Of a DNA stretch of 64,000 bases, positions 1,232-63,454 are shown piece by piece (position 1 is the first letter of the stretch; the number at the start of each line of letters is the position of its first letter). The DNA is taken from NCBI GenBank assembly GCA_051294905.1, contig CM119386.1, positions 19,220,001-19,284,000 of the forward strand, read 5' to 3'. Under the pieces are notes generated by a model. That model did no database searches and had not been told where the DNA came from. It saw only the letters and a program-made list of their open reading frames with translations. Position numbers and translations under genes: made by a program. The DNA is from Botryllus schlosseri (Eukaryota).

Positions 1232-2479
1232 ATGGAAGCCGAAAATCCCAGTCACAAAGTCGGAAATAGCACATTGCCTTCACCGCGCCATACCGACGAC
1301 AGTGAAACTGTTTGCGAGAAAGCATTCAGTTCCGAAAACGCAAGAATTGGACACGTGAAAATCCATACGGGAGAGAAAGAGCATGAGCGTGACAAATGCG
1401 GGAAAGGTTTTGTGCAAAAAGTCCAACTGAAGAAACATTTGCGTGTTCACACTGGAACTAAATATCACAAATGTGCTGTATGCGGTGTGGGATTTGCGCA
1501 GAAGTCTGCCCTCAAATATCATTTGTCAATCCACACTGGAGTGAAAGACCATAAGTGCGAAGTATGCGGGATGGGCTTTGTGTGGAAGTCTTTACTCAAG
1601 TATCATTTAACTATCCACACCGGAGTGAAAGACCATAAGTGTGCTGTATGCGGTATGGGATTCCGTCTGAAGTCAAATATGAAAAAGCATACGAAGATTC
1701 ATTCTGCCGCAACAAAGTATGAGTGTAATATATGCGGTATGGGATTCCGTCTGAAGTCATCTATGAAAAAGCATACGAAGATGCATTCTGCCGCAACAAA
1801 GTATGAGTGTGATATATGCGGGACCGGCTTTATGAAGAAGTCTTTACTCAAAAATCATTTAAGTATCCACACCGGTGAAAATGACAATAAGTGTGATGTA
1901 TGTGGGCTGCTTTTTGTGACAAGCAGTCGACTGAAACGTCATTCGTTGATTCACAGGAGATTGAAAGAATACGAGTGCTATCTTTGTGGGAAGTCGTTTC
2001 GACAAAAGTGTAATTTAAAAACCCATGCGCTAGTTCACTCCAACGTCCAACAATACCAATGCGAGATATGCGACAAAAAATTTCGTTACAAAGCACAGTA
2101 CGATCGACATCTCGAAGATCATATCGGCATCCGAAAGCATGAATGTTCTATTTGCGGCAAGAAGTTCGGTCACAGCAAGAACTTGAATTTGCACCTAAAA
2201 ATCCACTCTACTGTGAAATCCCACGTCTGCGAGATTTGCGGAAAAGGATTTGCTCGCCGTGGTCACTTGGAATACCATTTGAAACTTCATTTTGGAATCA
2301 AAGAACATGCGTGCCAGTTGTGCGGAAAGGAATTCTGTTTCAAGTTTCAGTTGAAAAGTCATATGCTGAGGCACAGCGACGTCAGAGAGCATCGCTGTAT
2401 GATATGCAACAAGCAATTTCGTCGCGCGGCAGGATTGAGGACGCACATTGGTAGGCACAACGGGACGGAATGTAATTAA
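1232..2479 (+). CDS. C2H2 (Kruppel-type) zinc finger protein, 415 aa, single-exon ORF
   Basis: 12 intact CxxC-x12-Hxxx-H fingers with TG(E/V)K-like linkers, plus 2 degenerate N-terminal fingers lacking the first Cys. No effector domain is visible. An upstream exon cannot be excluded. Confidence 0.9.
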   Translation: MEAENPSHKVGNSTLPSPRHTDDSETVCEKAFSSENARIGHVKIHTGEKEHERDKCGKGFVQKVQLKKHLRVHTGTKYHKCAVCGVGFAQKSALKYHLSIHTGVKDHKCEVCGMGFVWKSLLKYHLTIHTGVKDHKCAVCGMGFRLKSNMKKHTKIHSAATKYECNICGMGFRLKSSMKKHTKMHSAATKYECDICGTGFMKKSLLKNHLSIHTGENDNKCDVCGLLFVTSSRLKRHSLIHRRLKEYECYLCGKSFRQKCNLKTHALVHSNVQQYQCEICDKKFRYKAQYDRHLEDHIGIRKHECSICGKKFGHSKNLNLHLKIHSTVKSHVCEICGKGFARRGHLEYHLKLHFGIKEHACQLCGKEFCFKFQLKSHMLRHSDVREHRCMICNKQFRRAAGLRTHIGRHNGTECN

Positions 2480-6250: not shown

Positions 6251-9200
6251 TCAAACTCTCAATTGCGTCGCGATCTGCAGCATGCTCTTCAGACCCGGCA
6301 TGAACGCGGAAATCTCGGAAAAGTTTGAGTTCGACACGATCTGCGTGTGCAGGCGAAGACCGCCGGCTAGATCTCCAGAACCGATGGACTGCGCGAGTTG
6401 ATGCAGGCCCGTGACTATATGCGGTGATAGCTGAAATGCGTAATGTAAGTTATTGAGAGCCATATGGTGGATAAGGCGAGTGTGTTCTCACGGTGTTGGC
6501 ACGCAATTTGTCGTACAAGAATTCCATCCTACGTTCGCAATCATCCAGTTTCCTTTTCATTTGCTGCAGATTGAAAACAAATAAAAAACGTCAGTCAGAG
6601 GCGGTCAAAGCAGTCGATGTTGGTGCACAAGGAGAAGTAACATTGTAACATTTCGCAAAGATGTCAAAACTACTTCAAGTGGAATTCGAAAACGTCGGTC
6701 TGGGAAGTATTCAGGTAATTTTAATAAGGAGATTTGGTCCAGGTGTCGTGAACTTTTAACAGTAGATCGGAGATGTCTACATTGTAAGTTGCATGGTGCG
6801 GCTATTCAAATCACTGCGACAGCACAAAAAGTGGGATTTTGGAGTATATATATTCGGCTACCGCAATACAGATGCTATTTCACGTATTTGTTTCGACACT
6901 TTCACTCACAAATGTGATCCAAAAATATCTCAAAACTACCTTCTACTTCACAAAATATCGAGTGTAAAAAGTGAGTGGATTTGCACAAAAAAATTGTTGA
7001 GCATCAGAGCACAAATCATAACTGCTCGAGTAACTAGCACAAGTAGGAAAACCCTATACAAGTACTCAGAAAAATTAAAAGTACTTTGATACTGACTACA
7101 TCTGATAAGAACAGACTCAATCGGATATAAACAAGCACAAAATAACAGATTTGAATAGTATATTCATATTGAAAGGAACCCGAATATTTTCGGCTGACGA
7201 TTACCCCTGACGAGTGCCAGCCGAAAATATTCGGGTTCCTTTCAATATGAATATACTATTCAAATGTGTAATTTTGTGCTTGTTTATATCCGATTAGAGT
7301 TTGTTCTTATCAGATGTAGTCAGTATCGAAGTACTTTTACAAGAGATTCTTAGAGACACAGAACTTCAATATACAATTGAATAGTATATTCTTATTGGAA
7401 TGAATCCGAATATTTTCGGCTGACGATTACCCTAGACGAGTGCCAGCCGAAAATATTCGGGTTCATTCCTATCGGTAATGGTCATTAACCGTTTCAAAAA
7501 ACGCTTGGCTACTAGCTGTCGCCAAGCTCATTAATGACTGTTGAAACGACGTTGAACTAATGCCGCAAAATCCTTCAAAAAGACGAGTTACCGGATTAGC
7601 AGCGCTGGCCGAACAGCGCTTGATGAGCCCTTCGAATTGCGTTTGCAAAATCTGATGTTCCGCGGGGATGGGAGCTTTCGGCATGTCCTTTGCGGCTTTG
7701 GTGGGAAGAGACGGAGCAGGTGCCCGTACCTAAACAGACAGACAGACATTTCATTTTCAAATTGTGATTTTCTTCAAAACATTCACCTTCATTTTCAAAT
7801 TGTGATTTTCTTCAAAACATTCACCGACGATACATATTAGCGAGAACAAACAATACGACACAGTGACGGAATTTGATGACCTTGTGGTGGAGAGTACCAG
7901 TACTCTAATTTGAGCAAAGTAAGCTACTCTAGCGAGCCGACGATACCTGCACTACACCACCAAAAATCTCGACAACGGTGAAATCAACTAGTTTCGGACA
8001 AATGCTCGAAAGGTGTGACTTGAAACAAAACAACAATACAACCGCACGTTATAGGAGCTGAACTTCAAGCTACACACTTGCACGCAAATAGCCTTCATAA
8101 ACAAAGACAAGGGGGCATCGGTTCAACAACAAACAATCGTTCCAGTTCTATATAGAGATTGTTGGTGATTGGCAGCGGAATAGTCTATAAGTCCTTAACT
8201 AATTGTTGACAGAAGAAATCTAGACAGCGTTGCTACGATCCGGTCACATCCTTCGTGAATTCTTACAATTCAACGTAAACGTAGATGTCACAAATAACCT
8301 TAGATTAGCAACAGTCCCTTCTTGAGTAAGAAATATCGAAATCACAACCATTATAAATATCAGCGAGTCTGCGGTCCCGTCTGAAAATATCATTTTTACT
8401 CGTTTTCTGAGACCCCGTGTTGCGTCAGCCACGCTGAATATTTAAATTTAATTTGCTATCTACTATTTCGCTGTGGGCCTACAGTAATTTGGTTGATAGG
8501 CTGGCTTCATGAAGACTTTACAATTAGTTTTGAAACTATAATTTCCGTTGATACTATAACTCATACTAGAAAGGGGCATTTAATTTCAGTGCTTGAAAAC
8601 AATGTCTCTTACTACTAGACGCAAGTCGTTACAACTAATACTTAATTCAGCCTTGACTACTCGAATCATTTTGACCAGCCCTAGTCACAATTCAAAAGAC
8701 GTGACTCGGAAGAATTTGCGCTATGCTGATTTTCGATTTCAATTTGCAAACCGGATTCGAATTAATCGGATTTATCAACCCCAATTACAGCCTGTAATTA
8801 AAACATGGTCTCTAGTAAAATTCCAGGCACTGAATCTACACCATAGCCACCACCCGGCTCTACACAATACCTCGTTGGCAAAATCACTCTCTTCCGTTAC
8901 CTCCGAAGACGTGTTCAAGCCATCCTGACAAGTACATGAAGCATGAAAATGCAATACATTCAAAATCGTATCAAACAAAGATGCATGTCAAATAAATTCA
9001 CTCGATTGTACCTGGTGACCGGCCGGTGCCCCGGGCGGATTCTGCTGCATGGCGTACGGCATGTTGTTAGCATGGGGCTGGTTCGGCATCATCGGTGCCA
9101 TAGGCGCGGCCGCTGGCTGCATGGGGGTCATGAAGTTGTAATCTTGAGGTTGATACGACGGTACGCTTGTCTGTTTATAAACGGAGACAATTTAATTGGC

Positions 9201-12200
9201 GACACTGAAATTTGAGTTCACACACACACGCAAATTAATAACAGTTGTGTAAATCCTTGCGACAATCGCAAGAAAATGGTACACACGATTTTTGGTAATT
9301 AAAGTATATAAGCTGGTGAATAAGACAAAGATTAATATGTCCAGCTCCGATAAACTGTTTGAATATTATGTTCAAAGTACCACAGTCATGTACATAGTTG
9401 ATGCATCAAAGATTCAAGTTAGCACGCTGGCAGCATACACAAACAATTAATCACCAAAGTTGTAAAAGCTATTCAGCACAAGAGGGGTGAAGGAGTGTTT
9501 AAATCTCTCCAATCGAACTGAGAAACAAAGATTTGAAAATAGTGAATGAAATCAGTATAAACAAATTGGTATTGAAAATATCAAATAACATACGAGCATA
9601 CGAGTAAATACTAGATCAGCGGTTCTCAACCGGGGGTCCGCGGACCCCTAGGGGTCCGCGAAGCAATTTCAGGGGGTCCGCGAGACCTCTAAATTTTCAG
9701 AATGGTTGATAACCTTTTTTTTAATTTGAGAAAGCATGAGGCAGTTTCGCACCACAACTGGTAAAACCTCATGACTCATATCAGCATAATAATCGTCTGA
9801 CATCAACTATCGTAGTGTCGAAATTCATTTTCATTGCCAATTTTCCAATAACCTGCTAATAGAAACATATTGCTGTTTAGAGACGCTTTTTTGGGGTTTG
9901 TGGAAAAAAACATGAAGATAGTAACGTCAATCAGGGTGACTTCGTAATGTCTGCGAAACCTTCTCGATTTGACGTTGTCAGTCTCATCAAATTAGTGACC
10001 AGTGGCTTGAAATAAAATTTCCGAAGCATTTCCCTAATTTGTCCCATTGCCGGAATTGAAACCTCGCCACCAAGCCCATTATATCCTGTAATATACATAA
10101 CCACTATTTGAACAGCTTCTTGAAGGTACAGAACTTCAATATACTATTGAATAGTATATTCAGATTGAAATGAACCCGAATATTTTCGGCTGACATTCGT
10201 CATAAATTGGACAATGATACCAGCTCTTAAAGCTTGGCTATCAGATTTGGCGCATTCTTATTGCGGATGCGCTATCAAAAAGGCTGGTTTTTTGATGAAC
10301 AAGGAGTGTTTCGTTGCTATCGAAGCATCACGCTCCAACCCTGCCATTCATATCACCAGTTATATTGGTATGCAGCCTTGTCTTGTTAATGTTTAATTGT
10401 TCATGGTCGAAAATATTTCCTCGTAAATATATATATGTAAACCCGAACAGAACAAGTCGTTTCATGACAGTCTTTATCAGGTTGGAAAACTTGGATCCAT
10501 TCTTCGGCGCACAAAATTTGTCTATACTTTTAGATTAGGATTTTTCACTTTGACGGTAGAAACTCTCTGCGGGTCAATCAAAATGCCGTCGTGGGCCGAA
10601 TCCGACCCGTGACCCTATGCTGCCCGTCCCTGCGCTAGATGCTGGGCGTGATATGTTCATAAAATATATGTTTCCTCATTTTGGTGTCATAAATGTTGCG
10701 ATCACACCATAAGTATCTTCAGAAGCGTTATGCGTTAATATTGCATTAGCCTCCATCTATCTTTGCGGAAATGGTTTCCGGATCTCCTCGTTCATATCAA
10801 AACGAAGACGCGGATTTTCAAGATACGACCTCGTACTTCAAGAAATACAGCAGCAAAATTAATAAAATAATAAAAGGCTACCAATTTCTACATAAATAGC
10901 ATCATGTTATTTTCAAGAATAATCATCATTTTGCTGTTTATCACAAGCCTACAGTTCATATTTGCACGTAACAGATGAAGGTTGCACCATAATAGAGCTA
11001 AAATTGAACTAAACCTTGAGGGGGTCCGCGAGAGTCCGTGACGGTCAAAAGGGGTCCGCGAAGCCAAAAAGGTTGAGAACCACTGTACTAGATGACGGAT
11101 CGAGAGACTGCATAACCTACAACCAATATTCGAGCAGAAAATTATTACAGAATTTTGGACGACACCACAAGCACCAAATAATCAACATTTGCATGACTGC
11201 AAAAATGAAGACAGTCAAATCTAAGAAATGACAAATCCCCTACTCCACCAGTAAAATGTGTGGAATGCGATTGAACGGAAAATTTTCATCACATGCACCA
11301 GATAAAATACATGCAATGGTCAACGAATTTGCTTCTAGGTAAGTACTGTGTATGCTGAGGTGTTAGTCTTGAGATATATACCGTAGAGTCAAGTGTACAG
11401 TTCAATCTCAAATTGTTTCACTGCAGCATAGAGTACGATACACATGGAGGCTGGCAGTCGCACTTCTTGAAACGTATCCTTCCCTACATTGAATCTTTTA
11501 ATTCTAGCCTGTAAGTCGACATTGTTTGGTGTACGTACGATGTCGGATATTGAACAGCTTCATGCTTTCGAGATCGCGTGGACGACGATTGAAGTAGCCA
11601 AGCAATATGCCTATTACTTTTACGAGAATCAAACCTCTAACTCGATCAATTTTGGTCGGTTGATCGCAGCTTCAAATAAACAGAGTGGAAGAACTTCAGA
11701 CACATGCATAACACGATTTGGAAAATAAAATTTTGATTTGTTCAAAGTTCAAACATTGAGTCTTGCGGCAAGTTGTGAGAAGCAGATGGGCATTTTTCAT
11801 GATCTTGTTCATAGCTGAATTTCAATAGAAATAATTTAACATTTGACAGTAATCAGAGCTGGGCAAAACGAGCACCTGGGAGATTCGAGTCTGAGCCGAG
11901 TATTAAGATCTGAGTGAAGTATTCGAGTATGTATTATTTTTGGTAAATGATGCCACTTACATGATATCCAAAATAACTTCGTATTACGATGCTAAGGTAG
12001 ACCACAGTCAATCAAAGTATCGCGGCCCCAATGGTGGGAATAGTCGTAAAACTATATTTTTCTCTGATAAAATATTACTAGTAGAAGAGACCATTGGAGG
12101 TACTGAACTTTGGAATATCTTTTCTGCTGACACTCATCAGGGGAAAACGTCAGCAGCTGGTAGAGAATTCAAAAGAACATTGTATCTCAACAGTCGCATT

Positions 12201-15200
12201 ACCAGGGTTGTAATGCCTCGAGTCATGAGTCTGACTCAGACCACAAATTTTTGGTGACTCGATTCATTTTATCAAATGCGCAAAATGACTCGCCTCTAGT
12301 CAATATATGTATTGAACTGAAAACTGATCAGTGAAGGCTAGCTATGACTCGGAATCGACCCTCAACTAGCTGACTTGGACTTGAATTGAAAATGACTTGA
12401 CTTGAGTCAAACTATAACAGAGAGATTGACTTGTGACTCGGAACCTTGTGACTTGGTTACAACCTGGCATATTAACAATTATTATGACACCAGCAACGGC
12501 ATAAAGATTCGAATGATCATACAAACAGACTGTTTAAGCTCAATCTACTATTTCTTAACTGTTATTTTGAAAAAGCCTAATCTAAAAATAGGAAATGCGA
12601 ATCTTTATGCCCGTGACGTCATATTTGGTGATACAACTGTTGATATAGAAAGTTATGTTCAATTCTTCACTAGTTGCTGACGAGTGTCAGCCAAAAATAT
12701 TCGCGATTTACTCCATTAAATTTACTTTACTCTTGATAAAAAACATCGATTCTCAATACAAGACTCATTACAATTGATACTCGAGTCCTCAAATCGTTAT
12801 GCCCAGCTCTAGTCGTAATCACTGATTTCGGGGTCGATTTCGACAACGTGATTAAGAACATATCGATGGATCGACAATCCGTCATCACTTGTACATCCTC
12901 CTGCGACGTTTGCTCCACAGTGAAAGGCAAGTCTCCGCTTCTTTTCCCAAACGGAGACAGCGGCTTAAAATAACTGGCCATTTTGGACATAATCCCATCG
13001 CCGGGTTCGTCCTTGTCAATAAACGGAATGTTAATATTTTCAAGGTCTACATCGCACACGACGAAGCCGAAAAACCTTTCTATCTGACGGCGGGGGCATC
13101 GCCACGGCGGAGTTATATGCCGTGGTGACTGGCAGTGGTCCGAAATTCGTCACGTCTGATTGCTGGGAAAAGGTTCAGTGAATCAACACATGACTCCCGG
13201 TTTACAGTATTCCAGTGAATTCGAAACTTGATGAATTTGGCATTTCATCGCCCTAATCCCTTATCCACAACACTAGCCTAGCCTAACTCCCAAGCACAAC
13301 CTAACCCTAACAAGAGTGACAATTCACCAATTGCCTTACTCACTGGCACAACCATTCAGTATATGCAATATATTTCCAAGTGATTGTCAGTCAGTCTGAT
13401 GTCTGTCATTACCAATGGGTCGTAACTGGTGGGCCACGGTTCACTTTGCATTTTACGTCGAGCAATTCGATGTGGGCCAAAGTGCTATTTTGAAAATTGT
13501 TAGATGATAAATTCTTTTTCGTTTTGTTCTTTTATTCCAGTAAATAACATATTCTGTTGCCAAATTTTTTCAACTTCAGTAAACTTCAGTAAAAAGAGTT
13601 TTGTTACGGCGATGTAAAGGGCACAATGCGATTTTACAGAACGGCAGCGGTAAATCTGTACAGTAACGCATCATTAGATTGCATTATGATCAAGATGATA
13701 CAAAATTATATTAAAACATTTAACGAATATGAACCGTAACTACCAGGAGACACTGTCAGACATATCATTCACTAAGCATGATACGCTGCATGCTTCACAC
13801 CACGTTTGTGCTAGCTTAGGATGAAAAGCTCGCCTACGTTTGATCACATATGCACAGATCAATGAAGAATGCTGTGCATTAGAAGCCACCGCATATGAAA
13901 TGATACAATTGCATGCACCGATTTTGTGAGGGTGAAAGCTGTGAACTGATTTATGATGATATTACATGAAAGGGGGTTCAATGTTGAATCTTACATTGAA
14001 CTATGATAGTAAACTATGATAAAAACTACTTCTTCAAGAATCAGGATTAAAAACTGGGTGTATGAGAGTCTTGACTCGTAGGGGTTATGATCACAATTGC
14101 CAGAACAAAGTGCAATAAACAAAGATCCACCGTCATAGTATGAACAAGCTCCAGGCTCATGTCGTAGAACAAGGAGCCTAGTGAGTTGAAATATGCCCGA
14201 CAATTATCTGTGACGGCATATTTCAGATTAACAATGCCGCAAAATGAAGTCAAAACGAAACCATCGGTGTTTTCATCACCAGCACGGTAAAATATGATGG
14301 TTTAGTCGGTAGATATTGCGTCTATACAAAGTGCACTGATATTGAGCTTTAATAAGTGGGAAAATTAAACCAGGAAGAAACAATTTCATACAGGAAGCAA
14401 AAAACCACAGTCCAGAGCCCCTCGGTACAAAGTTAGGAACACTATTCTACTGTGAGCCACAAAACATTGCAAAAAAGCACACCACATTATTTTCATAATA
14501 GCATCCATTGCAATGATACACAACTTGAAGAGTTATCTCCGATCAAGAGTTATCGGCAAGCTACAATGTGAATTTCATGGTGTGTAATACTCATTGTTAT
14601 ATCATACTTTGCCAGATTGGTTTCACTTTTGAATCTGATTTCCTTTATTGTGCCGATAACTCTTGTAATGATGCACCCGAAAAGTCTTCAAGTTACGTTA
14701 CGATAAATGTACTATTGGAATGGATGTTATGAAAGCAATCTGCCACCTCGGTACCACGAACCAACTATTTACACCACTACATGAGATCCCATGCAAAGAA
14801 CCAAATAGTGATCAATAAAACAAAAACAGAAAAACACGTCCATGTACCAAGACCTGTGCATTACAACCGGTTGCCGGGCACACAACGGACGGTATTGAGA
14901 TATTAGCAATCAGACATTGAGTACCATGCGAGTCTGTGGTCAACATGCTGTTACAGTAGAGACCCCCTGAAATCTGACAAGAGGGCAGAAATTAGGGACA
15001 ATAATCGACAACGTGGCGCAACAGCAAGATTTCCTACGATGGAGCAATAGCTGATGCAGAACTATTTTTTGATGCAACCCTTGAGCAACAAACCACAGTG
15101 GAATGCAGATGTAGTGAGTAATGAAGTGCTTGATACTTGGCAGCCAAACAGCTTACTTATTAGGCCTATCTTCTATACCTTGTTTGAGTATGAACTTTTT

Positions 15201-18200
15201 AAATGGGGTTTGTATCATTTCCAAGATTGAAATCGTCGTAACCATCGCTCAAATGAGACATGTCTTCAGACCACATTTACTGACGTTTGCTCTTGACGAG
15301 AGTAAGCCGAAAAGATCGGAGTGGACTAAATTTGGCAATATGAACGTATTGTTTGGGATTTTCACTTCTACTGAAGATTATCGATGCAGCACCTTGGATC
15401 TTGTGTAGCATAAACTAGTTTTGGGATGTTTCTATCACTTTTACGAGTGAATTGTTACCGTAACCGGCGAAAATACCCCCTGAATTAAGGTAACCGAAGA
15501 TATTTTTAAAACTTGTCCTATTCGTTAGTGTCATAAGTGATTTTACGTTAGTCTTGAATATACATGTTACAATTTCAAAACTAGTCACCCCCGATTAACG
15601 ACTGAAAGTATGTGATCCCTCAAACAAATCAACTGTGCGAAACTATTGGGTATGTTAAGACCATTCAATTTCTACACCCACTTGAAGTAGTTTTAATAGA
15701 GTAGAATCTACTGCGTTACTTCTGCTTGCGCACTAGGGCTGTTCAAAAATGACCTTTTTTCCTGAATCTTGCTGATTACTTGATTAAATCGTTAGGTTGA
15801 CTTAAAAAACGACGCACACCAAATTTGAATTCATTCCAACCAATAATCGCGGATTTCGTAGAGTTTGAAAATTTTGAATTTGCCAAAAAATGCAAAAAAA
15901 AATTTTTCAAATTTTTCTGCCAACCCCATGAAATTGTTGCGCGGTCTTCAAAAACGATGCAGAAGCGGAGTTATTCAAGTTTTTTTATGGTAATTCTGGG
16001 ATGATCCACCAATCAAGGATAATCCCAGAATTATCAAAGAAAAACTGAAATAACTCCACTTCTACGGCTTCAAATTGAGTCAAATTTGTTTTGCATCGTT
16101 TTTGAAGACAGCACAACAATTTCATGGGGTTGGCAGAAAAATTTGAAAAATTTTTTTTTGCATTTCTTGGCAAATTCAAAATTTTCAAACTCTACGAAAT
16201 CCGCGAATATTGGTTTGAATGAATTCAAATTTGGTGTGCGTCGTTTTTTAAGGCAAACTAACGATTTAATCAAGTAATCAGCAAGATTCAGGAAAAAAGG
16301 TTATTTTTGAACAGCCCTATTGCGCACACATGCCTATATGTCTGAGGACCTAACTATCATGTCTCAAGCACACGTCTCGAATGGATCAAACGGTGTTATT
16401 ATGCAATCGTAAACCAACAACATACAACCGTGCATGACAAATCGTGAGTATGAAATCCGCATGAGAATGGTTGAATCCGTGCATGGTTCTTCACAATGTA
16501 CAGAGCAATCTTCAACATACCTTCTTTTTTCTCGGCACCCTGTTGGGATCGACGGCAGGCGGGTCGTTCCAACCGCCCTGGTCTGGAATAGCGGATTCCG
16601 TGGGTATGCTGATGGGCTGTCTGGGTGGTGCTCCGTACGAGATATTAGGCTGGAGGGGTTGGCTTGTCACTGGCATGCTGGGTGCCGGCGCCGGTGGGAA
16701 TTGTGGCACACCTGGTTGCTGAAGCTAAGAAAAACGGAAGACTATGCACAACGTCCATCGATGACATCATGATTCAAAATTTCTGTATGAATCTAAGTAA
16801 TCGAGTTATTGAAGAGACTGTTGAACGCATAAAGGTCAATAAACAATGGAATACTATTTTCATCTTGAAATAAACCCAATATTTTCAGCTTGCACTAGTA
16901 GAGAATACAAAAGAACATTGCATATGAGCAATCGTATCACCAAATATGACCAGACGTGTTTCTGAGCTCATTTGATATCTCTAGTCTGTTTACGAACGTT
17001 CCGCTGCATGAGACTATTGATATTTGTGCCAACGCGCTGTACGGTGGTAAGTTACCACCACCATCAATCCCGCGTAACGTCTTTGTTGAACTTTTACAAG
17101 CGGCAACTTGCTCCGGCAACTTGCTCCGTGGAATTTAGCTTTAACGAGGTCATGTTTCGCCAAATAGACGGCTTAGCCATGGGTAGTCCCCTGGGACCTA
17201 TTTTGGCCAACATTTTCGTAGGGTATTACGAGGGCGAGCTTCTCTCCCAGCGTGAGTCCGCCAAACCACTATTGTACCGCCGATACGTAGATGATACATT
17301 TGTCATTTTCAGGAATGAATCGGAGTGTGACCAATTTCTCATTCGCTTAAACTCGCTTCACACGGCCTTGCAATTCACAATAGAAAAAGAAAGCAATAAC
17401 TCATTATCATTTCTGGACGTATTAGTTGAAAAGCGCAATACCAACAAATTTGAAACGTCTGTTTTCAGGAAACCGACATTCACAGGCCAATACCTTCGCT
17501 GGAATTCATTTAGTCCTCGGCGCAGAAAAATTAACCTCATAGGCACACTCGTGCATAGAGCGTTGATGATATGTTCGGGTAACAAACTGAGTTTAGAACT
17601 TGACTACATCCGAAAAATCTTACTGGATAACGGTTACCCTGAACACGTCATCAGCCGCGGCATGGAGAGGAAATTAACGCAATTCATCGCAGAAAAACGA
17701 ACAGAGCCCACCGCACGAACAATAAAAGATGTTTATATCCATCTACCTTGGATTGGCCCCATTTCCACCCGCTTTGAAAAACAATTGATTTCTGCTGTCA
17801 GTAAGTGTTACGACACAGTCAAAACCAATGTGATTTATACAACAACACAACTGCTCCCTTCAACACGCAAAGACATGCTTCCTGCACTTCAACAAAGTAA
17901 TGTAGTGTACGAATATAGGTGCCACTGTGATTGTGGCTACGTGGGAAGAACGTCAAGACGTCTGCAGGACCGCATAAACCAACATGTCCCCAGATTTATC
18001 AGAACACGCTCAGTGAAAAGCTCACCCTTAACTCATCCACTTAAGATTGATGCTGATCGATCAAAGGCCATTAATTCTGCCATCGGCAAACATCTGTTGG
18101 ATAATCCGATTTGTGCGAATAATTATCGAGACGACCGATTTCGAATCGTAGGGCGAGGTCGCACACAATTCCATTTGTGTGCCTTGGAATCAACTTTTAT

Positions 18201-21200
18201 CAAAATACACCAACCAAAACTCTGTCAACAAAAGGAGTTCATGTACCACCTAAAAATAGTACATTGAACGCTCTCTCTTTCATGCTGGTGACGTCATATT
18301 TTGTGATACGATTGTTGATATACAATGTTCTTTCCAATTCTCTACTAGTTGCTGACGATTACCCCTGACGAGTGTCAGCCGAAAATATTCGGGTTCATTT
18401 CAATATGAATATACTATTTAAATATGATTGTTGATATACAATATTCATTCAATTCTGAACAAGTTTCTTACGATTACCACTGACGAGTATCAGCCGAAAA
18501 TGTTCGGGTTGATCTCAATATGAACACAGCATTGAAAATCAAGTAGGCTGCCTGAGCCATATGATTCCGAGTCGAGTATTAGGATTTGAGAATCAAGTAT
18601 TCGAGTATCACTCATTACTAGGGCAAGTTTTTGTTGCAGTTAAATCCGTGGAAAGTTGCATTTATTCATTTGTTTTCGAAAAAAGTTGCAGAAGTTGCAT
18701 TTTGACCACATTTTGCTCGGTTGACTAAAAAAAAGGTCAATTTTCCGGCTCAGCTCCCGAAATACCCGTAAAAGCGTTACTTCGGTGCTGATTTACGGTG
18801 TTTCAGTCGAATTTGGCCATGTATTTCACCAAAATCGAAAATACCTTCATGAAAAATCGAAAAAGTTGCATTAAAAATATGGACAAAAGCTGCAAAAAGT
18901 TGCACTATAAGATTCCTTCAAACAGCTTTAAACAGCATTCTACATATCTTACAATTATTTAGGAAGCTGCCGGAAGCTGTAAAAAAAAGTTGCAAAAGTT
19001 GCAAAAACTAGCCCTACTCGTTACGATGTTATAGAACGACGTTGATGTCAAGCAGTGACCAATCTTTACAATGTTCATGAAGTGATACAAAGCAGTCATT
19101 GTTCTGAATTATGAGGCTATTCTTGCTAACGTGAGATGGATATCATTGTCCTTTTGACCGCAAAAAAGATATTTTAATCTGGGCGTCTTATGTTTGTTGA
19201 ATTTGAATTTGTGTACTCGAACACTCGACTAAACTGTAAGGATAATGCTCAACTTGGAAAATCAAATCCCCGGGTACCCATTGTTGAATAGTTGAATTCT
19301 CAAACCCTCAAAGCAGCATAGCATAGATTTGGATGAAAATAACGCATCACAAGATCTCACGGAGTGTCAGGATAACAAAGAAAACTGGTACGTACTGGTG
19401 CTGGATTGTATCCGTTAACAGGGACGACTGGAGGACCGGCAGGCGTCATCGGCTGTTGCGGTGTGTACAAATTGGTCGGGGCTGAAAGAATATCGTATAA
19501 AATTATGATGCTTGATATTCCCCGAACCATTGTTCACTTGAACATAAAAAATTGTGTCAGAAAATACAACTAAAAAATGGCAGCCAAAATGTGTAGTCAA
19601 GTCAAGCACCCGAAACGTTAATAATCGACTGATGGCCATAATTGAGTAACGTACAATCTTTGAAATTTAAAATCACACAAATTCAAAAGCGATGTAACAA
19701 CAGTATTATAATAATGCTACAATTACAACTACAAACGGTTTGCCACGTGCATCATAAACAATCGACAAGTGAAACATTTCTGGCAAAAAACACAGTTCCT
19801 GCACTTCACAGAACAGGTGGACACACCCACACCGACAGTGTTCTGACAGACGTAACTCGCATCACACATTCACCGTGCGCCACTCCAAAAATCTATCCAC
19901 AAAATTTGTGCGGCTATAAAAACCAGGAGCAACTTTGTGACGAGATACCTTGACGGTGAACATAGTAGATATCATTCTGCGGCATTCTCGTAATCTGTCG
20001 ATGCGACCACACTGGGACAGAAAGACAATTGAGGAGAGCAGTGCATCCTGCAGGTCAGAGGTGGTCAATAACAATAGACCACTTTTTCACAGAAATCAAG
20101 CGGGTTTCGCGTGCTCGCGCTATGTACGTCCTACTCAACTAAGTCAAGTGATAATGATTTATGACTACTTCCTGCCTTCCACTCCAACTCTGCACCATTA
20201 CGCTATCTTGTAGGTGACGCCAAGACTCACTCTGTAGCTAATCTAATTGGGCAAATACTACTGGATCAATCGTTACGACCATTCATACTACAGTTGTTCG
20301 AACATCAGCATAAAGTAACAGAGTTCAAACCTCACATCGCTAATCGGAAAATCTACAAAATTTACTCACCGGCATAACCTGGTCTAGCTGCAGCAGGTCT
20401 GCGGTTTGATTTGTAAGGATTGTTTGAAGGCGAATTCGATCTGCAGGGCGACACCGGTCTCTCGGGCCGTCTGGGTACGGCCATCGGATTCATGGTGTTC
20501 ATCTGCGACGGGAAGAGAAAGGATAGAAACACCAGATGCTGCGACGTTTTCACTTGATCTGTGATTCCTACATACGACTGATTTAAAACATGCGTCATGC
20601 TGTCAACTTGGTTTGCTGGCTACGGGAAAATATCTATAAAAATGGGAAAAACTGGAGAGGCTTTGAATACAAAGAAAGTTTAACCTATCGAGAGGGCATA
20701 GTGAATGTCTATCTGTCCATCTCCAGCAGAGCTTGGCAGCAATCAAGATTGAAAAGACAAATACCTGTTTAGGTTGTTGATATGCTGACGGGTTGTACGG
20801 CTGTCGTCCTGCAAACAAAGCAACGTCGTTTAAACGTTTCCGATCAGATTAGAGATAGGGTCGTGTAAAGTCGGGTACTTGAGGGATTCTACGTGAAGTA
20901 ATAGGCTTTTGTGTATCATCCATAACAGTGCGGAAAGTTCAGATGCGAACCATTGATGCGGCCACAAAGAATACAGCGCACATTCTACACCAGTGGTTCC
21001 CAACGTGGGCGATTAGGCGGTCTAGGGGGGCGAAAATAACGAAGGGGCGATAGGGGGGCAAAAACGGACAAAGGGGGCGATAGGGGGCGAAAACAACAAA
21101 GGGGGCGATAGGGCGTTAAAACGGCTATATTGAAGTCGGGACCGTAACTACCGCACCCAAACCCCCCGATTGGGGGTGGGGGCTTGAACTCGATGGGGGC

Positions 21201-62542: not shown

Positions 62543-63454
62543 GGCGCTTCTTCGATATACGCCCGAGATAAAAACAGTGTTCCCCATGACACCCGTAAAT
62601 GTTTCCCCATGAACACGATAAAATTTTATAAACGTCGAAATATTTTTTTTGCATTTGAATAGACGGATATCAGGGTTGGGGAATGGAAATATTGGTGTTG
62701 AAAGTGGGTTAGGGTCAAAGTTGGGGTTAGGGTATCCCAAGATTACGGTTGGGGGAGGGGGTAATAGGGAAGAGGAAGGAGGGATATTAGGGTTGGATGT
62801 GGGTTAGGGTCAAAGTTGAGGTTAGGGTATCCCAAGTTTAGGGTTGGGGCCTGGGGGAGAGGGGGATATTAGGGTTGGGGAGGGGTATTAGGGTTGGATG
62901 TGGGTTAGGGTTAAGGTTGGGGTCAAAGTTTAGGTTGGTGTATCCCTAACCCACATCCAGCCCCCTCCCCCAACCGTAATATTGGGACACCCTAACCTTA
63001 ACTTTGACCCTTACCCTCCCACATCCAACTCCAAGACCCCCCTCCCCCAACCCGAATATACCCATTCCCCAACCCTAATCCTGGGATATCCCAACCTCAA
63101 CTTTGACCCTAACCCTAACCCACATCCAACTCTTATACCCCTCCCCCAACCCTAATATCCCCCTTCCCCAACCCTAATATTTGGATACCCTAACCCCAAC
63201 TTTTACCCTAACCCACATCCAACCCTAATATCCCTCCATCCTCTTTCCTAATACCCTCTGCTCCAACCCTAATCTTGGGATACCCTAACCCCAACGTTGA
63301 CCCCAACCCACCTCCAACCCTAATATATGTCTCTCCAAAGGCAAAAAAAACAATTTATTTTGACGTTTATAAAATTGTATCGTGCTCATGGGAAGCACTT
63401 GCTGGTGTTACGTGAAACACTGTTTCGATCTCGGGCGTATATCGAAGAAGCGCC
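62543..63454. mobile_element. 912-bp foldback DNA transposon derivative with telomere-like G-rich internal repeats (Merlin- or MULE-like, unclassified)
   Basis: Termini GGCGCTTCTTCGATATACGCCCGAGAT / ATCTCGGGCGTATATCGAAGAAGCGCC (perfect 27-bp IR); exact 8-bp direct repeat GTTTTCGG at 62535-62542 and 63455-63462. The left arm has TTAGGG/GGGTTGG units, the right arm CCCTAA/CCAACCC units, meeting near 62940. Confidence 0.85.

What the first reader, a model, noticed from the sequence alone, without database searches (positions are those of the whole stretch)
18309..18515. Tandem minimal hammerhead ribozymes at the 3' end of a Penelope-like element
Seen: two ~115-bp tandem units directly after the ORF stop, each with CUGACGA-G(N7)C-GAAA-AU(A/G)U-UC, helix I ACCC/GGGU and a palindromic helix III (AAUAUU). 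Established: Penelope-like elements encode minimal type I hammerheads with short or palindromic helix III that work as dimers. Inference: the two units form a double hammerhead that processes the element's RNA and could release a ~115-nt monomer able to circularise, like a retrozyme. An upstream GCUGAC can pair with GUCAGC in loop II of unit 1 and give an alternative inactive fold, a possible built-in switch.
Basis: partly seen in the sequence, partly recalled or inferred. Interest (0 to 1): 0.85.

Follow-up and report, generated by a model that had tools for sequence, protein, structure and literature searches.

The report
Penelope retroelement tail with pseudoknotted hammerhead
This is the tail of a dead Penelope-like jumping gene carrying the small self-cutting hammerhead RNA motif such elements are known to have; the less ordinary point is that the motif's second helix is made by pairing with a short box just upstream instead of by a hairpin.

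Summary
The observation largely holds. A 115-bp tandem repeat (18306-18524, 1.9 copies, 86% alike) starts 38 nt after the stop of a 5'-truncated, frame-broken Penelope-like element (PLE) ORF (16950-18267). Unit 1 carries a complete minimal type I hammerhead core with predicted cleavage at 18390/18391.

Unit 2 is a decayed copy. Five functional positions are changed, its model score is 35 bits against 65, and RNA depth over it is about zero.

The upstream GCUGAC / loop GUCAGC pairing is real and conserved. In 19 aligned copies, 17 of them from other assemblies, all six pairs show compensatory changes, helix I covaries and helix III stays palindromic. This whole RT clade lacks a hairpin helix II. 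The pairing therefore most likely supplies helix II as a pseudoknot, as in the known pseudoknot hammerheads (PDB 8YDC), and is not an off-switch.

RNA reads show no molecule ends at the cut site and no 115-nt back-joint, so a retrozyme-like circle is unsupported. Almost all reads come from other dispersed copies.

PLE hammerheads are already known; the pseudoknot helix II in a PLE looks like a new variant. Other agents of this scan reached the same reading on other pieces of this genome.

The parts
16894..16950 (-). Inverted fragment of the 5' part of the PLE tail (pLTR). The hammerhead core is deleted.
   Evidence: blastn gives 88% identity to 18293-18349 in reverse. Sequence read. An inverted 5'-truncated copy at the 5' end is typical of PLEs (PMC8557442).
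16950..18267 (+). 5'-truncated, frame-interrupted PLE ORF holding the RT (YVDD), HTH_animal and GIY-YIG endonuclease regions.
   Evidence: tblastn of 620-746-aa relatives: P0008 residues 270-698 match in two frames that change at about 17114/17116. A 13-bp tandem lies at 17101-17128. Translation. Pfam RVT_1. 1763 homologues.
18306..18420 (+). Repeat unit 1, the tail segment with an intact pseudoknot-type hammerhead motif.
   Evidence: TRF. Covariance model R1 scores 65.1 bits, E 3e-14. Nearly identical to L001 from another assembly.
18351..18356 (+). Box GCUGAC, the 5' strand of the pseudoknot helix that stands in for helix II.
   Evidence: Complementary to 18374-18379. All six pairs show changes on both sides across relatives. 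Duplex energy -8.1 kcal/mol.
18357..18360 (+). Linker GAUU between the box and helix I. It is 4-5 nt long and starts with G in the aligned relatives.
   Evidence: Alignments A2 and A3.
18361..18364 (+). Helix I, 5' strand (ACCC).
   Evidence: Pairs with 18391-18394. Helix I covaries in relatives: UUCCC/GGGAA, UUUCUC/GAGAAA, CCCA/UGGG, GCCA/UGGC, UCGUAA/UUGCGA.
18365..18371 (+). Catalytic box C3-A9 (CUGACGA).
   Evidence: Relatives carry CUGANGA or the published U3-A8 covariant UUGACAA (PMC4209133).
18372..18380 (+). G10.1, one spacer U, the 6-nt pseudoknot strand GUCAGC (18374-18379), then C11.1.
   Evidence: G10.1-C11.1 is invariant in 19 of 19 sequences. The same layout is seen in PDB 8YDC (PMC11300833).
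18381..18390 (+). G12 A13 A14, the palindromic helix III AAUAUU (18384-18389), and C17. Predicted cleavage lies between 18390 and 18391.
   Evidence: Relatives keep a palindrome while changing its letters: AAGCUU, AACGUU, AAAAGCUUUU. The AAUAUU self-duplex is only -0.2 kcal/mol.
18391..18394 (+). Helix I, 3' strand (GGGU).
18421..18537 (+). Repeat unit 2, a decayed duplicate. Core at 18480-18486; nominal cleavage site 18505/18506.
   Evidence: Model score 35.1 bits. Box/loop pairing 3 of 6, helix I mismatch, helix III AAUGUU. RNA depth about 0 at >=92% likeness.

Best explanation
The region is the 3' tail of a dead copy of a Penelope-like retrotransposon (5'-truncated, frame-interrupted), followed by a partial, older-looking duplicate of the same tail.

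Unit 1 holds the family's hammerhead motif in intact form. It is a minimal type I hammerhead in which:
- helix I is ACCC/GGGU;
- helix III is only a 6-nt palindrome, which can form a helix only with a second copy (dimer);
- helix II is reduced to the G10.1-C11.1 pair.

The 6 nt inside the loop closed by that pair (GUCAGC) pair with a box (GCUGAC) that lies 4 nt upstream of helix I. This gives a pseudoknot helix that stacks on G10.1-C11.1 and takes the place of helix II.

Shown here: the sequence anatomy, the PLE identity, covariation of the box-loop helix and of helix I, conservation of palindromy in helix III, and restriction of this architecture to one RT clade.

Inferred: that the motif self-cleaves PLE transcripts, probably slowly and with help from a second copy and/or the element's protein, as published for other PLE hammerheads.

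At this locus the element is not transcribed at a detectable level. Unit 2 is probably catalytically dead, so no 115-nt unit is expected to be released.
For: Tandem repeat and motif:
- TRF and sequence.
- PLE ORF.

The same motif about 100-130 nt after the ORF stop in relatives from other assemblies and metagenomes:
- L001-L007, L009-L023, L051, L068, L079, L084-L089.

Box/loop pairs differ between subclades but stay complementary:
- GCUGAC/GUCAGC
- UCUGAC/GUCAGA
- UCCGAC/GUCGGA
- UCUAGC/GCUAGA
- UGACGC/GCGUCA
- GCAUU/AAUGC

Pair counts:
- On the MAFFT alignment A2, which was not fitted to the structure, 85% of cells are paired against 66% in shuffles (0 of 500 reach it). 10 of 11 pairs show changes on both sides. 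The covariation score is 0.48 against 0.18. Slid controls give 29-39% paired.
- On the model-fitted alignment A3, 88.9% are paired against 72.8%, and 6 of 6 pairs show changes on both sides.

Phylogeny:
- In the RT tree, the 23 pseudoknot-type loci and the 20 hairpin-type loci are separated by one branch with 100/98 support.
- The hairpin-type relatives have the published PLE mini-hammerhead with a 5-7-bp helix II (PMC4209133).

Precedents for this architecture being active:
- A crystal structure in which G10.1-C11.1 closes a loop whose 6-bp pseudoknot with a 5' element joined to helix I replaces helix II (PMC11300833).

Energies: box:loop -8.1 kcal/mol against core:loop -4.7.
Against: - No cleavage has been shown. 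The RNA runs show no enrichment of read ends at 18390/18391.
- Published PLE hammerheads cleave poorly in vitro (PMC4209133). One of them needed the element's protein, and no RNA-seq ends were found at its cut site (PMC11167929).
- Helix III of this subfamily (AAUAUU) is very weak, -0.2 kcal/mol.
- Nested MFE folding gives no thermodynamic signal, z about 0 to +1. It prefers a core/loop hairpin and a CCGAA/UUCGG hairpin that would hide the core.
- Covariation shows that the box and loop pair. It does not show that the paired state is the active one.
- The known pseudoknot hammerhead has an extra stem (helix IV) around its pairing partner. I found no such stem here.
- Rfam models do not recognise the motif.
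Confidence: 0.7

Rival explanations
1. The two units fold together in cis as a double hammerhead, cut at 18390 and 18505, and release a ~115-nt RNA that circularises like a retrozyme. The box-loop pairing is an inactive alternative fold that acts as a switch.
For: - Two cores lie 115 nt apart on the same strand.
- The heterologous helix III AAUAUU/AAUGUU can form six pairs.
- Dimer action of PLE hammerheads and circles from tandem type I hammerheads are published (PMC4209133; PMC7229834).
Against: - Unit 2 has lost the box-loop pairing (3 of 6 pairs, +1.4 kcal/mol) and has an A.G mismatch at the first helix I pair.
- Its model score is 35 bits against 65.
- RNA depth over unit 2 is about 0. 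No read ends were flagged at either site, and no joint from 18505 back to 18391.
- Other copies do not have the tandem.
- Animal retrozyme RNAs are about 170-400 nt.
- The whole clade lacks any other helix II, so a pairing that covaries and sits where helix II should be is unlikely to be only an off-state.
Confidence: 0.08
2. The box-loop helix is a plain conserved hairpin with another job, and the hammerhead core inside its loop is not used for catalysis in this clade. The other job could be a binding site for the element's RT/endonuclease, or a fold-back site in the cDNA that produces the inverted copies.
For: - Covariation proves pairing only.
- PLE hammerhead function is unsettled, and some successful PLE clades lack the motif (PMC8557442).
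- Hammerhead mutants did not affect insertion in vitro (PMC11167929).
- The palindrome at 7151-7262 has its inversion junction exactly at the box.
Against: - The core letters, G10.1-C11.1, H17, a covarying helix I and a palindromic helix III are all kept together across subclades. The core also includes the known compensated U3-A8 form. A mere hairpin loop would not need any of these.
- The geometry matches an active pseudoknot hammerhead: a 1-nt spacer, a 6-bp helix abutting C11.1, and a short linker to helix I.
Confidence: 0.15
3. A chance resemblance to a hammerhead in AT-rich repeat DNA.
For: Rfam finds no hammerhead. Helices I and III are very short.
Against: - The motif pattern is expected 0.00 times in shuffles and found 6 times.
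- The same architecture sits after the ORF stop of dozens of divergent PLE copies, with covariation.
Confidence: 0.02

Closest known systems
Minimal hammerheads of Penelope-like elements (Cervera & De la Pena 2014, PMC4209133; Lunse, Weinberg & Breaker 2017, which I could not read)
   Same: - Location in the PLE tail or pLTR.
- Type I topology with a short helix I.
- Conserved G10.1-C11.1.
- Helix III reduced to a palindrome that needs a second copy.
- The U3-A8 core covariant occurs in relatives.
- Many dispersed 5'-truncated copies.
   Different: - The published consensus has a long hairpin helix II of 7-8 bp with an unpaired nucleotide after A9.
- Here helix II is one base pair plus a pseudoknot with an upstream box.
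- The unpaired nucleotide is absent, except in L003.
Pseudoknot-containing hammerheads (Perreault et al. 2011, PMC3088659; Zhan et al. 2024, PDB 8YDC, PMC11300833)
   Same: - G10.1-C11.1 closes a loop whose nucleotides form a 6-bp pseudoknot with an element joined to helix I.
- The pseudoknot takes the structural place of helix II.
   Different: - Those examples are bacterial, metagenomic or designed monomers with a normal helix III. In 8YDC the partner strand is the loop of an extra stem (helix IV) with a triplex-forming linker.
- Here the partner is a single-stranded 5' box.
- Helix III is a dimer-type palindrome.
- The host is an animal retrotransposon.
Animal non-LTR retrozymes (Cervera & De la Pena 2020, PMC7229834; Li et al. 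2026 preprint 10.64898/2026.07.22.740005)
   Same: Tandem short repeats with type I hammerheads that are evolutionarily tied to PLE tails.
   Different: - Retrozymes are arrays expressed as ~170-400-nt linear and circular RNAs.
- Here there are only 1.9 copies of 115 bp and the second is decayed.
- No RNA was detected from unit 2, and no back-joint.
Double hammerheads of newt satellite 2 and ASBVd (Forster et al. 1988, as cited in PMC4209133 and PMC6466107)
   Same: An unstable helix III that becomes a full helix only when two copies pair.
   Different: Those have ordinary hairpin helices I and II and are proven to cleave. Nothing has been proven here.
Non-circularly permuted (type SGC) hammerheads (Eckert et al. 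2023, PMC10085705)
   Same: - The strands of stems I and II are joined directly by a linker of about 3 nt.
- The core stems become pseudoknots.
- Active examples show that such connectivity is tolerated.
   Different: Here the block order is the classic type I. Only the 10.x strand of helix II has moved to the 5' side.

Membership tests
Hammerhead ribozyme (type I) | Conserved core: C3 U4 G5 A6 N7 G8 A9, G12 A13 A14, A15.1-U16.1, H17. | tested here: met
   Unit 1 at 18365-18390 and unit 2 at 18480-18505 carry all core letters. Relatives have CUGANGA or the compensated form UUGACAA.
Hammerhead ribozyme (type I) | Helix I formed by the sequences flanking the core and the cleavage site. | tested here: met
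   ACCC/GGGU in unit 1. All 4 aligned pairs show changes on both sides in relatives. Unit 2 has a mismatch at the first pair.
Hammerhead ribozyme (type I) | Helix II as a hairpin between A9 and G12. | tested here: not met
   Only G10.1-C11.1 closing a 7-nt loop. A pseudoknot with an upstream box takes its place.
Hammerhead ribozyme (type I) | Recognition by the curated Rfam hammerhead models. | tested here: not met
   No hammerhead family at gathering score, nor at E<=10 on 18200-18620.
Hammerhead ribozyme (type I) | Site-specific self-cleavage giving 2',3'-cyclic phosphate and 5'-OH ends. | not testable with these tools
   The RNA-seq runs flagged no excess of read ends at 18390/18391. These libraries are not designed to capture such ends.
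Penelope-like element | Single ORF with a telomerase-like RT followed by a C-terminal GIY-YIG endonuclease. | tested here: met
   YVDD RT and a GIY-YIG-type C-terminus (VVYEY..GYVGRT). Homologues carry RVT_1, HTH_animal and GIY-YIG.
Penelope-like element | Partial tandem or inverted insertion structure: pLTRs, with an inverted 5'-truncated copy at the 5' end. | tested here: met
   Inverted tail fragment at 16894-16950. Partial tandem at 18306-18537. Head-to-head copies in L003, L084 and L086, and a direct pair flanking the ORF in L013. Matches PMC8557442.
PLE minimal hammerhead (Cervera & De la Pena 2014) | Palindromic or absent helix III, implying action as a dimer. | tested here: met
   AAUAUU here. 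Relatives have AAGCUU, AACGUU and AAAAGCUUUU.
PLE minimal hammerhead (Cervera & De la Pena 2014) | Long hairpin helix II (7-8 bp) with an unpaired nucleotide between A9 and G10.1. | tested here: not met
   Absent in the window and in its RT clade. Present in the more distant PLE loci.
Pseudoknot hammerhead (Perreault 2011; PDB 8YDC) | [quoted passage not shown] | tested here: met
   6-bp box-loop helix with covariation. 1-nt spacer, 0-nt junction to C11.1, 4-5-nt linker to helix I. Compared.
Pseudoknot hammerhead (Perreault 2011; PDB 8YDC) | The partner strand lies in the loop of an extra stem (helix IV). | tested here: not met
   Only 4-5 nt separate the box from helix I. By inspection, no conserved complementarity flanks the box in A2 or A3.
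Animal retrozyme | Tandem array expressed as unit-length linear and circular RNA. | tested here: not met
   1.9 copies only. Unit 2 depth about 0, no 115-nt back-joint, and 98% of reads run on into unlike sequence.

The most novel reading that the evidence does not exclude
A whole clade of animal Penelope-like elements has exchanged the hairpin helix II of its dimer-type hammerhead for a pseudoknot with a 5' box. That would be an active 'pseudoknot mini-hammerhead' not captured by current descriptors or by Rfam.

The same 6-nt complementarity in the cDNA could let 5'-truncated copies fold back and self-prime. This would produce the palindromic copies whose inversion point lies exactly at the box, as at 7151-7262.
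Probability: 0.4. Interest if true: 0.55.

Novelty: new variant of a known kind. Interest (0 to 1): 0.4.

Why it matters
Hammerheads in Penelope-like elements are well known, so the finding as written adds only one more locus.

What could matter is the architecture. Motif descriptors used for PLE surveys require a hairpin helix II. They therefore miss this clade, and authors have reported "core only" motifs that fit no descriptor (PMC8557442).

If the pseudoknot form is active, several things follow:
- Counts of PLE ribozymes are underestimates.
- The pseudoknot solution for helix II would extend from bacterial and designed RNAs to an abundant animal retroelement.
- The family would offer a natural series of compensatory variants for testing how dimer-type hammerheads fold.

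It does not open a long-standing question. The function of PLE hammerheads remains as unclear as before.

Tried and rejected
- **Rfam.** Searches at gathering score over the whole window and at E<=10 over 18200-18620 found no hammerhead family, only chance snoRNA-like matches.
- **Nested MFE folding.** Folding L001:1040-1240 and window:18290-18540 gave z-scores of +1.0 and -0.3. It cannot represent the pseudoknot, so it is not informative.
- **Cofolding of two units.** This did not recover the double hammerhead, because AAUAUU is too weak.
- **Alignment-free test.** I scored each upstream region against each loop type over offsets 4-14. Own pairs average 5.6 and cross pairs 4.5, but tolerance of G.U pairs and the relatedness of the types make it weak. 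I rely on the pair counts instead.
- **An extra stem (helix IV) around the box.** None is conserved.
- **Pairing of loop II with the catalytic CUGA box (a "decoy").** It is possible in the window family at -4.7 kcal/mol, but it is lost in the L007, L006 and L004 types, so it is not the conserved interaction.
- **RNA evidence for cleavage or circles.** None was found.
- **Papers not held.** Lunse et al. 2017 and Weinberg et al. 2015 were not in the library. I cannot exclude that a pseudoknot-type PLE hammerhead is already drawn there.
Full report
**1. What is there**

TRF finds a 115-bp tandem repeat at 18306-18524, with 1.9 copies, 86% matches and no indels. It starts 38 nt after the stop codon (18265-18267) of the ORF 16972-18267.

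[quoted passage not shown] Pfam sees RVT_1 weakly. A search of 5.8 billion proteins gives 1763 relatives at E<=1e-10, carrying RVT_1, DUF8422, HTH_animal and GIY-YIG.

tblastn with 620-746-aa relatives shows that the copy covers only residues ~270-698. The match falls in two reading frames that change at about 17114/17116, where a 13-bp unit is tandemly repeated. Directly upstream, 16894-16950 is an inverted fragment of the tail, 88% alike to 18293-18349, with the ribozyme part missing.

So this is a dead PLE copy, truncated at its 5' end. It has the inverted 5' fragment and the partial 3' tandem that are typical of PLE insertions (PMC8557442).

**2. The hammerhead motifs**

Unit 1 reads:
- box GCUGAC (18351-18356)
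- linker GAUU
- helix I ACCC (18361-18364)
- CUGACGA (18365-18371)
- G10.1 (18372), U, GUCAGC (18374-18379), C11.1 (18380)
- GAAA (18381-18384)
- palindrome AAUAUU (18384-18389)
- C17 (18390)
- GGGU (18391-18394)

All conserved core letters are present. The strict pattern is expected 0.00 times in shuffled sequence and occurs 6 times in the window.

Unit 2 keeps the core but differs from unit 1 at five functional positions:
- two changes in the box (UCUUAC);
- one in the loop strand (AUCAGC);
- one at the first helix I pair (ACCA/GGGU);
- one in helix III (AAUGUU).

The covariance model built below scores unit 1 at 65.1 bits and unit 2 at 35.1 bits. Rfam's hammerhead models see neither unit. 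This is understandable, because there is no hairpin helix II and no cis helix III.

**3. Relatives**

I fetched DNA around homologous ORFs from other assemblies (L001-L003, L084-L089) and from 80 metagenome contigs (L004-L083). The loci split into two groups.

- **Distant PLEs, 30-38% amino-acid identity.** These carry the published mini-hammerhead: an unpaired nucleotide after A9, a 5-7-bp hairpin helix II and a palindromic helix III (PMC4209133).
- **Loci at >=44% identity.** These carry the window's architecture about 100-130 nt after the stop: G10.1, one spacer, six nucleotides, C11.1, and a 6-nt box 4-5 nt upstream of helix I that is complementary to those six nucleotides.

The box/loop letters differ between subclades but stay complementary:
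- GCUGAC/GUCAGC (window, L001)
- UCUGAC/GUCAGA (L002, L003, L010 group, L088)
- UCCGAC/GUCGGA (L004, L084, L086)
- UCUAGC/GCUAGA (L006, L085)
- UGACGC/GCGUCA, or GUGUCA with one G.U pair (L007, L089)
- GCAUU/AAUGC (L009)

Helix I also covaries: ACCC/GGGU, UUCCC/GGGAA, UUUCUC/GAGAAA, CCCA/UGGG, GCCA/UGGC, UCGUAA/UUGCGA. Helix III changes letters but stays palindromic: AAUAUU, AAGCUU, AACGUU, AAAAGCUUUU. The known compensated core U3-A8 (UUGACAA) appears in L002 and L088.

**4. Formal counts**

Alignment A2 was made by MAFFT and was not fitted to any structure. Two sequences in it are misaligned to the disadvantage of the model. On A2 the pseudoknotted structure gives:
- 85.1% standard pairs against 66.0% in shuffles (0 of 500 reach it);
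- 10 of 11 pairs with changes on both sides;
- a covariation score of 0.484 against 0.184;
- 29-39% pairing when the partners are slid by 1-3 columns;
- 88.5% pairing in the box-loop helix, with all six pairs changed on both sides;
- G10.1-C11.1 invariant in 19 of 19.

Alignment A3 holds the 52 hits of covariance model R1. It leans towards the structure by construction. On A3 the box-loop helix is 88.9% paired against 72.8%, with 37 doubly changed cells against 9.4.

An RT tree of 72 loci puts all 23 pseudoknot-type loci on one side of a branch with 100/98 support and all 20 hairpin-type loci on the other. One origin of the pseudoknot form is consistent with this tree.

**5. Why I read the pairing as helix II and not as a switch**

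First, this clade has no other helix II, yet it keeps every catalytic letter, helix I and the dimer palindrome under apparent constraint.

Second, the layout has active precedents:
- Perreault et al. [quoted passage not shown]
- In the 2024 crystal structure 8YDC, A9.G12 and G10.1-C11.1 form the short stem of a loop. That loop makes a 6-bp pseudoknot with a 5' element joined to helix I. The pseudoknot "fulfils the same role ... that helix II plays" and stacks on helix III (PMC11300833).
- Direct short linkers between stem I and stem II strands are tolerated in active permuted hammerheads (PMC10085705).

Third, the geometry here fits a classical H-type crossing: a 1-nt spacer across a 6-bp helix, no gap before C11.1, and a 4-5-nt linker from the far end of that helix to the far end of a 4-6-bp helix I. 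This last point is my inference from general RNA stereochemistry. I did not model it.

Fourth, the competing pairing of the loop with the catalytic CUGAC is weaker (-4.7 against -8.1 kcal/mol). It is also lost in the L004, L006 and L007 types, so it is incidental.

What differs from 8YDC: no extra stem surrounds the box, and helix III is a dimer-type palindrome.

**6. The tandem and the circle idea**

I laid four RNA runs of the same species on 16800-19000, at >=92% likeness.
- Reads pile up only on 18280-18427, about 250-400x per orientation in the bulk run. The ORF has fewer than 30x and unit 2 (18428-18575) about 0.
- 98% of the laid reads continue into unlike sequence. They therefore come from other dispersed copies embedded in other transcripts, not from this locus.
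- The common continuation after 18418 in those copies is the one seen in L001, not unit 2. The 115-bp tandem is thus private to this locus.
- No place where molecules begin or end was flagged. No joint from 18505 back to 18391 was listed.

These libraries are poor at capturing 5'-OH or cyclic-phosphate ends and small RNAs, so this is absence of support and not a refutation. The same negative result was published for the Anolis PLE hammerhead (PMC11167929).

Unit 2 has lost its pseudoknot and the first helix I pair. At most, unit 2 could lend its helix III strand to help unit 1 cut. Release of a 115-nt unit is unlikely. Helix III of this subfamily is also very weak at -0.2 kcal/mol, against -4.3 for AAGCUU. 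That fits the low intrinsic activity and the protein or chaperone dependence reported for PLE hammerheads.

**7. Comparison and novelty**

The association of dimer-type mini-hammerheads with PLE tails is established (PMC4209133; reviewed in PMC6765202). Pseudoknots that replace helix II are established too.

In the library I could search, I found no paper that links the two. I could not read Lunse et al. 2017 or Weinberg et al. 2015. I therefore class this as a new variant of a known kind, with moderate interest.

Other follow-up agents of this scan reported the same "pseudoknotted hammerhead in Penelope tails" on other pieces of this genome. I reached the reading, before seeing those notes. 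They are not independent evidence, because the DNA family is the same.

**8. Other copies in the window**

Model R1 finds these further copies:
- 7191-7246: 56.8 bits, inside a palindrome with 46-48-nt arms, loop U>C.
- 7417-7472: 47.7 bits, core box broken.
- 12101-12156(-): 44.8 bits, decayed.
- 15277-15332: 34.6 bits, decayed.
- 12674-12716 and 10164-10206(-): copies with the helix I and core segment deleted.

Only unit 1 of the present finding is intact.

Noticed in passing
window 7107-7472: Two 226-bp units, each with a hammerhead copy (7207, 7433). In the first unit, 7151-7262 is a palindrome with 46-48-nt arms, and its inversion point lies exactly at the box GCTGAC. This is what fold-back self-priming of a 5'-truncated cDNA at the box/loop complementarity would produce. 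As RNA, it would lock the ribozyme in a long hairpin.
   Followed up: partly
window 12117-12202 (-) and 12602-12703 (+): An inverted pair of tail fragments flanks about 400 bp. The + copy lacks the 13 nt between the two CTGACGA direct repeats, that is, the linker, helix I and the first letters of the core.
   Followed up: no
window 17101-17128: A 13-bp unit repeated 2.2 times coincides with the change of reading frame in the PLE ORF. Contigs of two RNA runs that cover this place lack one 13-bp unit, so other copies of the family do not carry it.
   Followed up: partly
window 15727-16326: A 600-bp stretch that is 85% identical to its own reverse complement (a large palindrome), just upstream of the PLE copy.
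   Followed up: no
window 10214-10357: A short fragment matching residues ~80-124 of full-length PLE proteins, next to an inverted tail fragment at 10103-10206.
   Followed up: no
window 62689-63316: Arrays of 95-99-bp repeats rich in CCCTAA/TTAGGG-like telomere motifs, on both strands.
   Followed up: no
window 1467-1802: 84-bp repeats that look like tandem C2H2 zinc-finger coding units.
   Followed up: no
L010, L011, L014-L016, L019, L020, L023 (metagenome loci): An abundant subfamily has the core UUGAAGA, U3 with G8 and so uncompensated. Most copies have U at position 17. This is either a tolerated wobble variant or a family that spread with an impaired ribozyme.
   Followed up: no
L004:2002-2060, L084:7894-7951, L086:7353-7410: These copies have one more A between A14 and the helix III palindrome than the hammerhead numbering allows. 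L079 of the same subclade does not have it.
   Followed up: no
L088:3373-3575: Two pseudoknot-type hammerheads of different box/loop types lie 147 nt apart on the same strand after one ORF. This is a natural heterologous pair.
   Followed up: no
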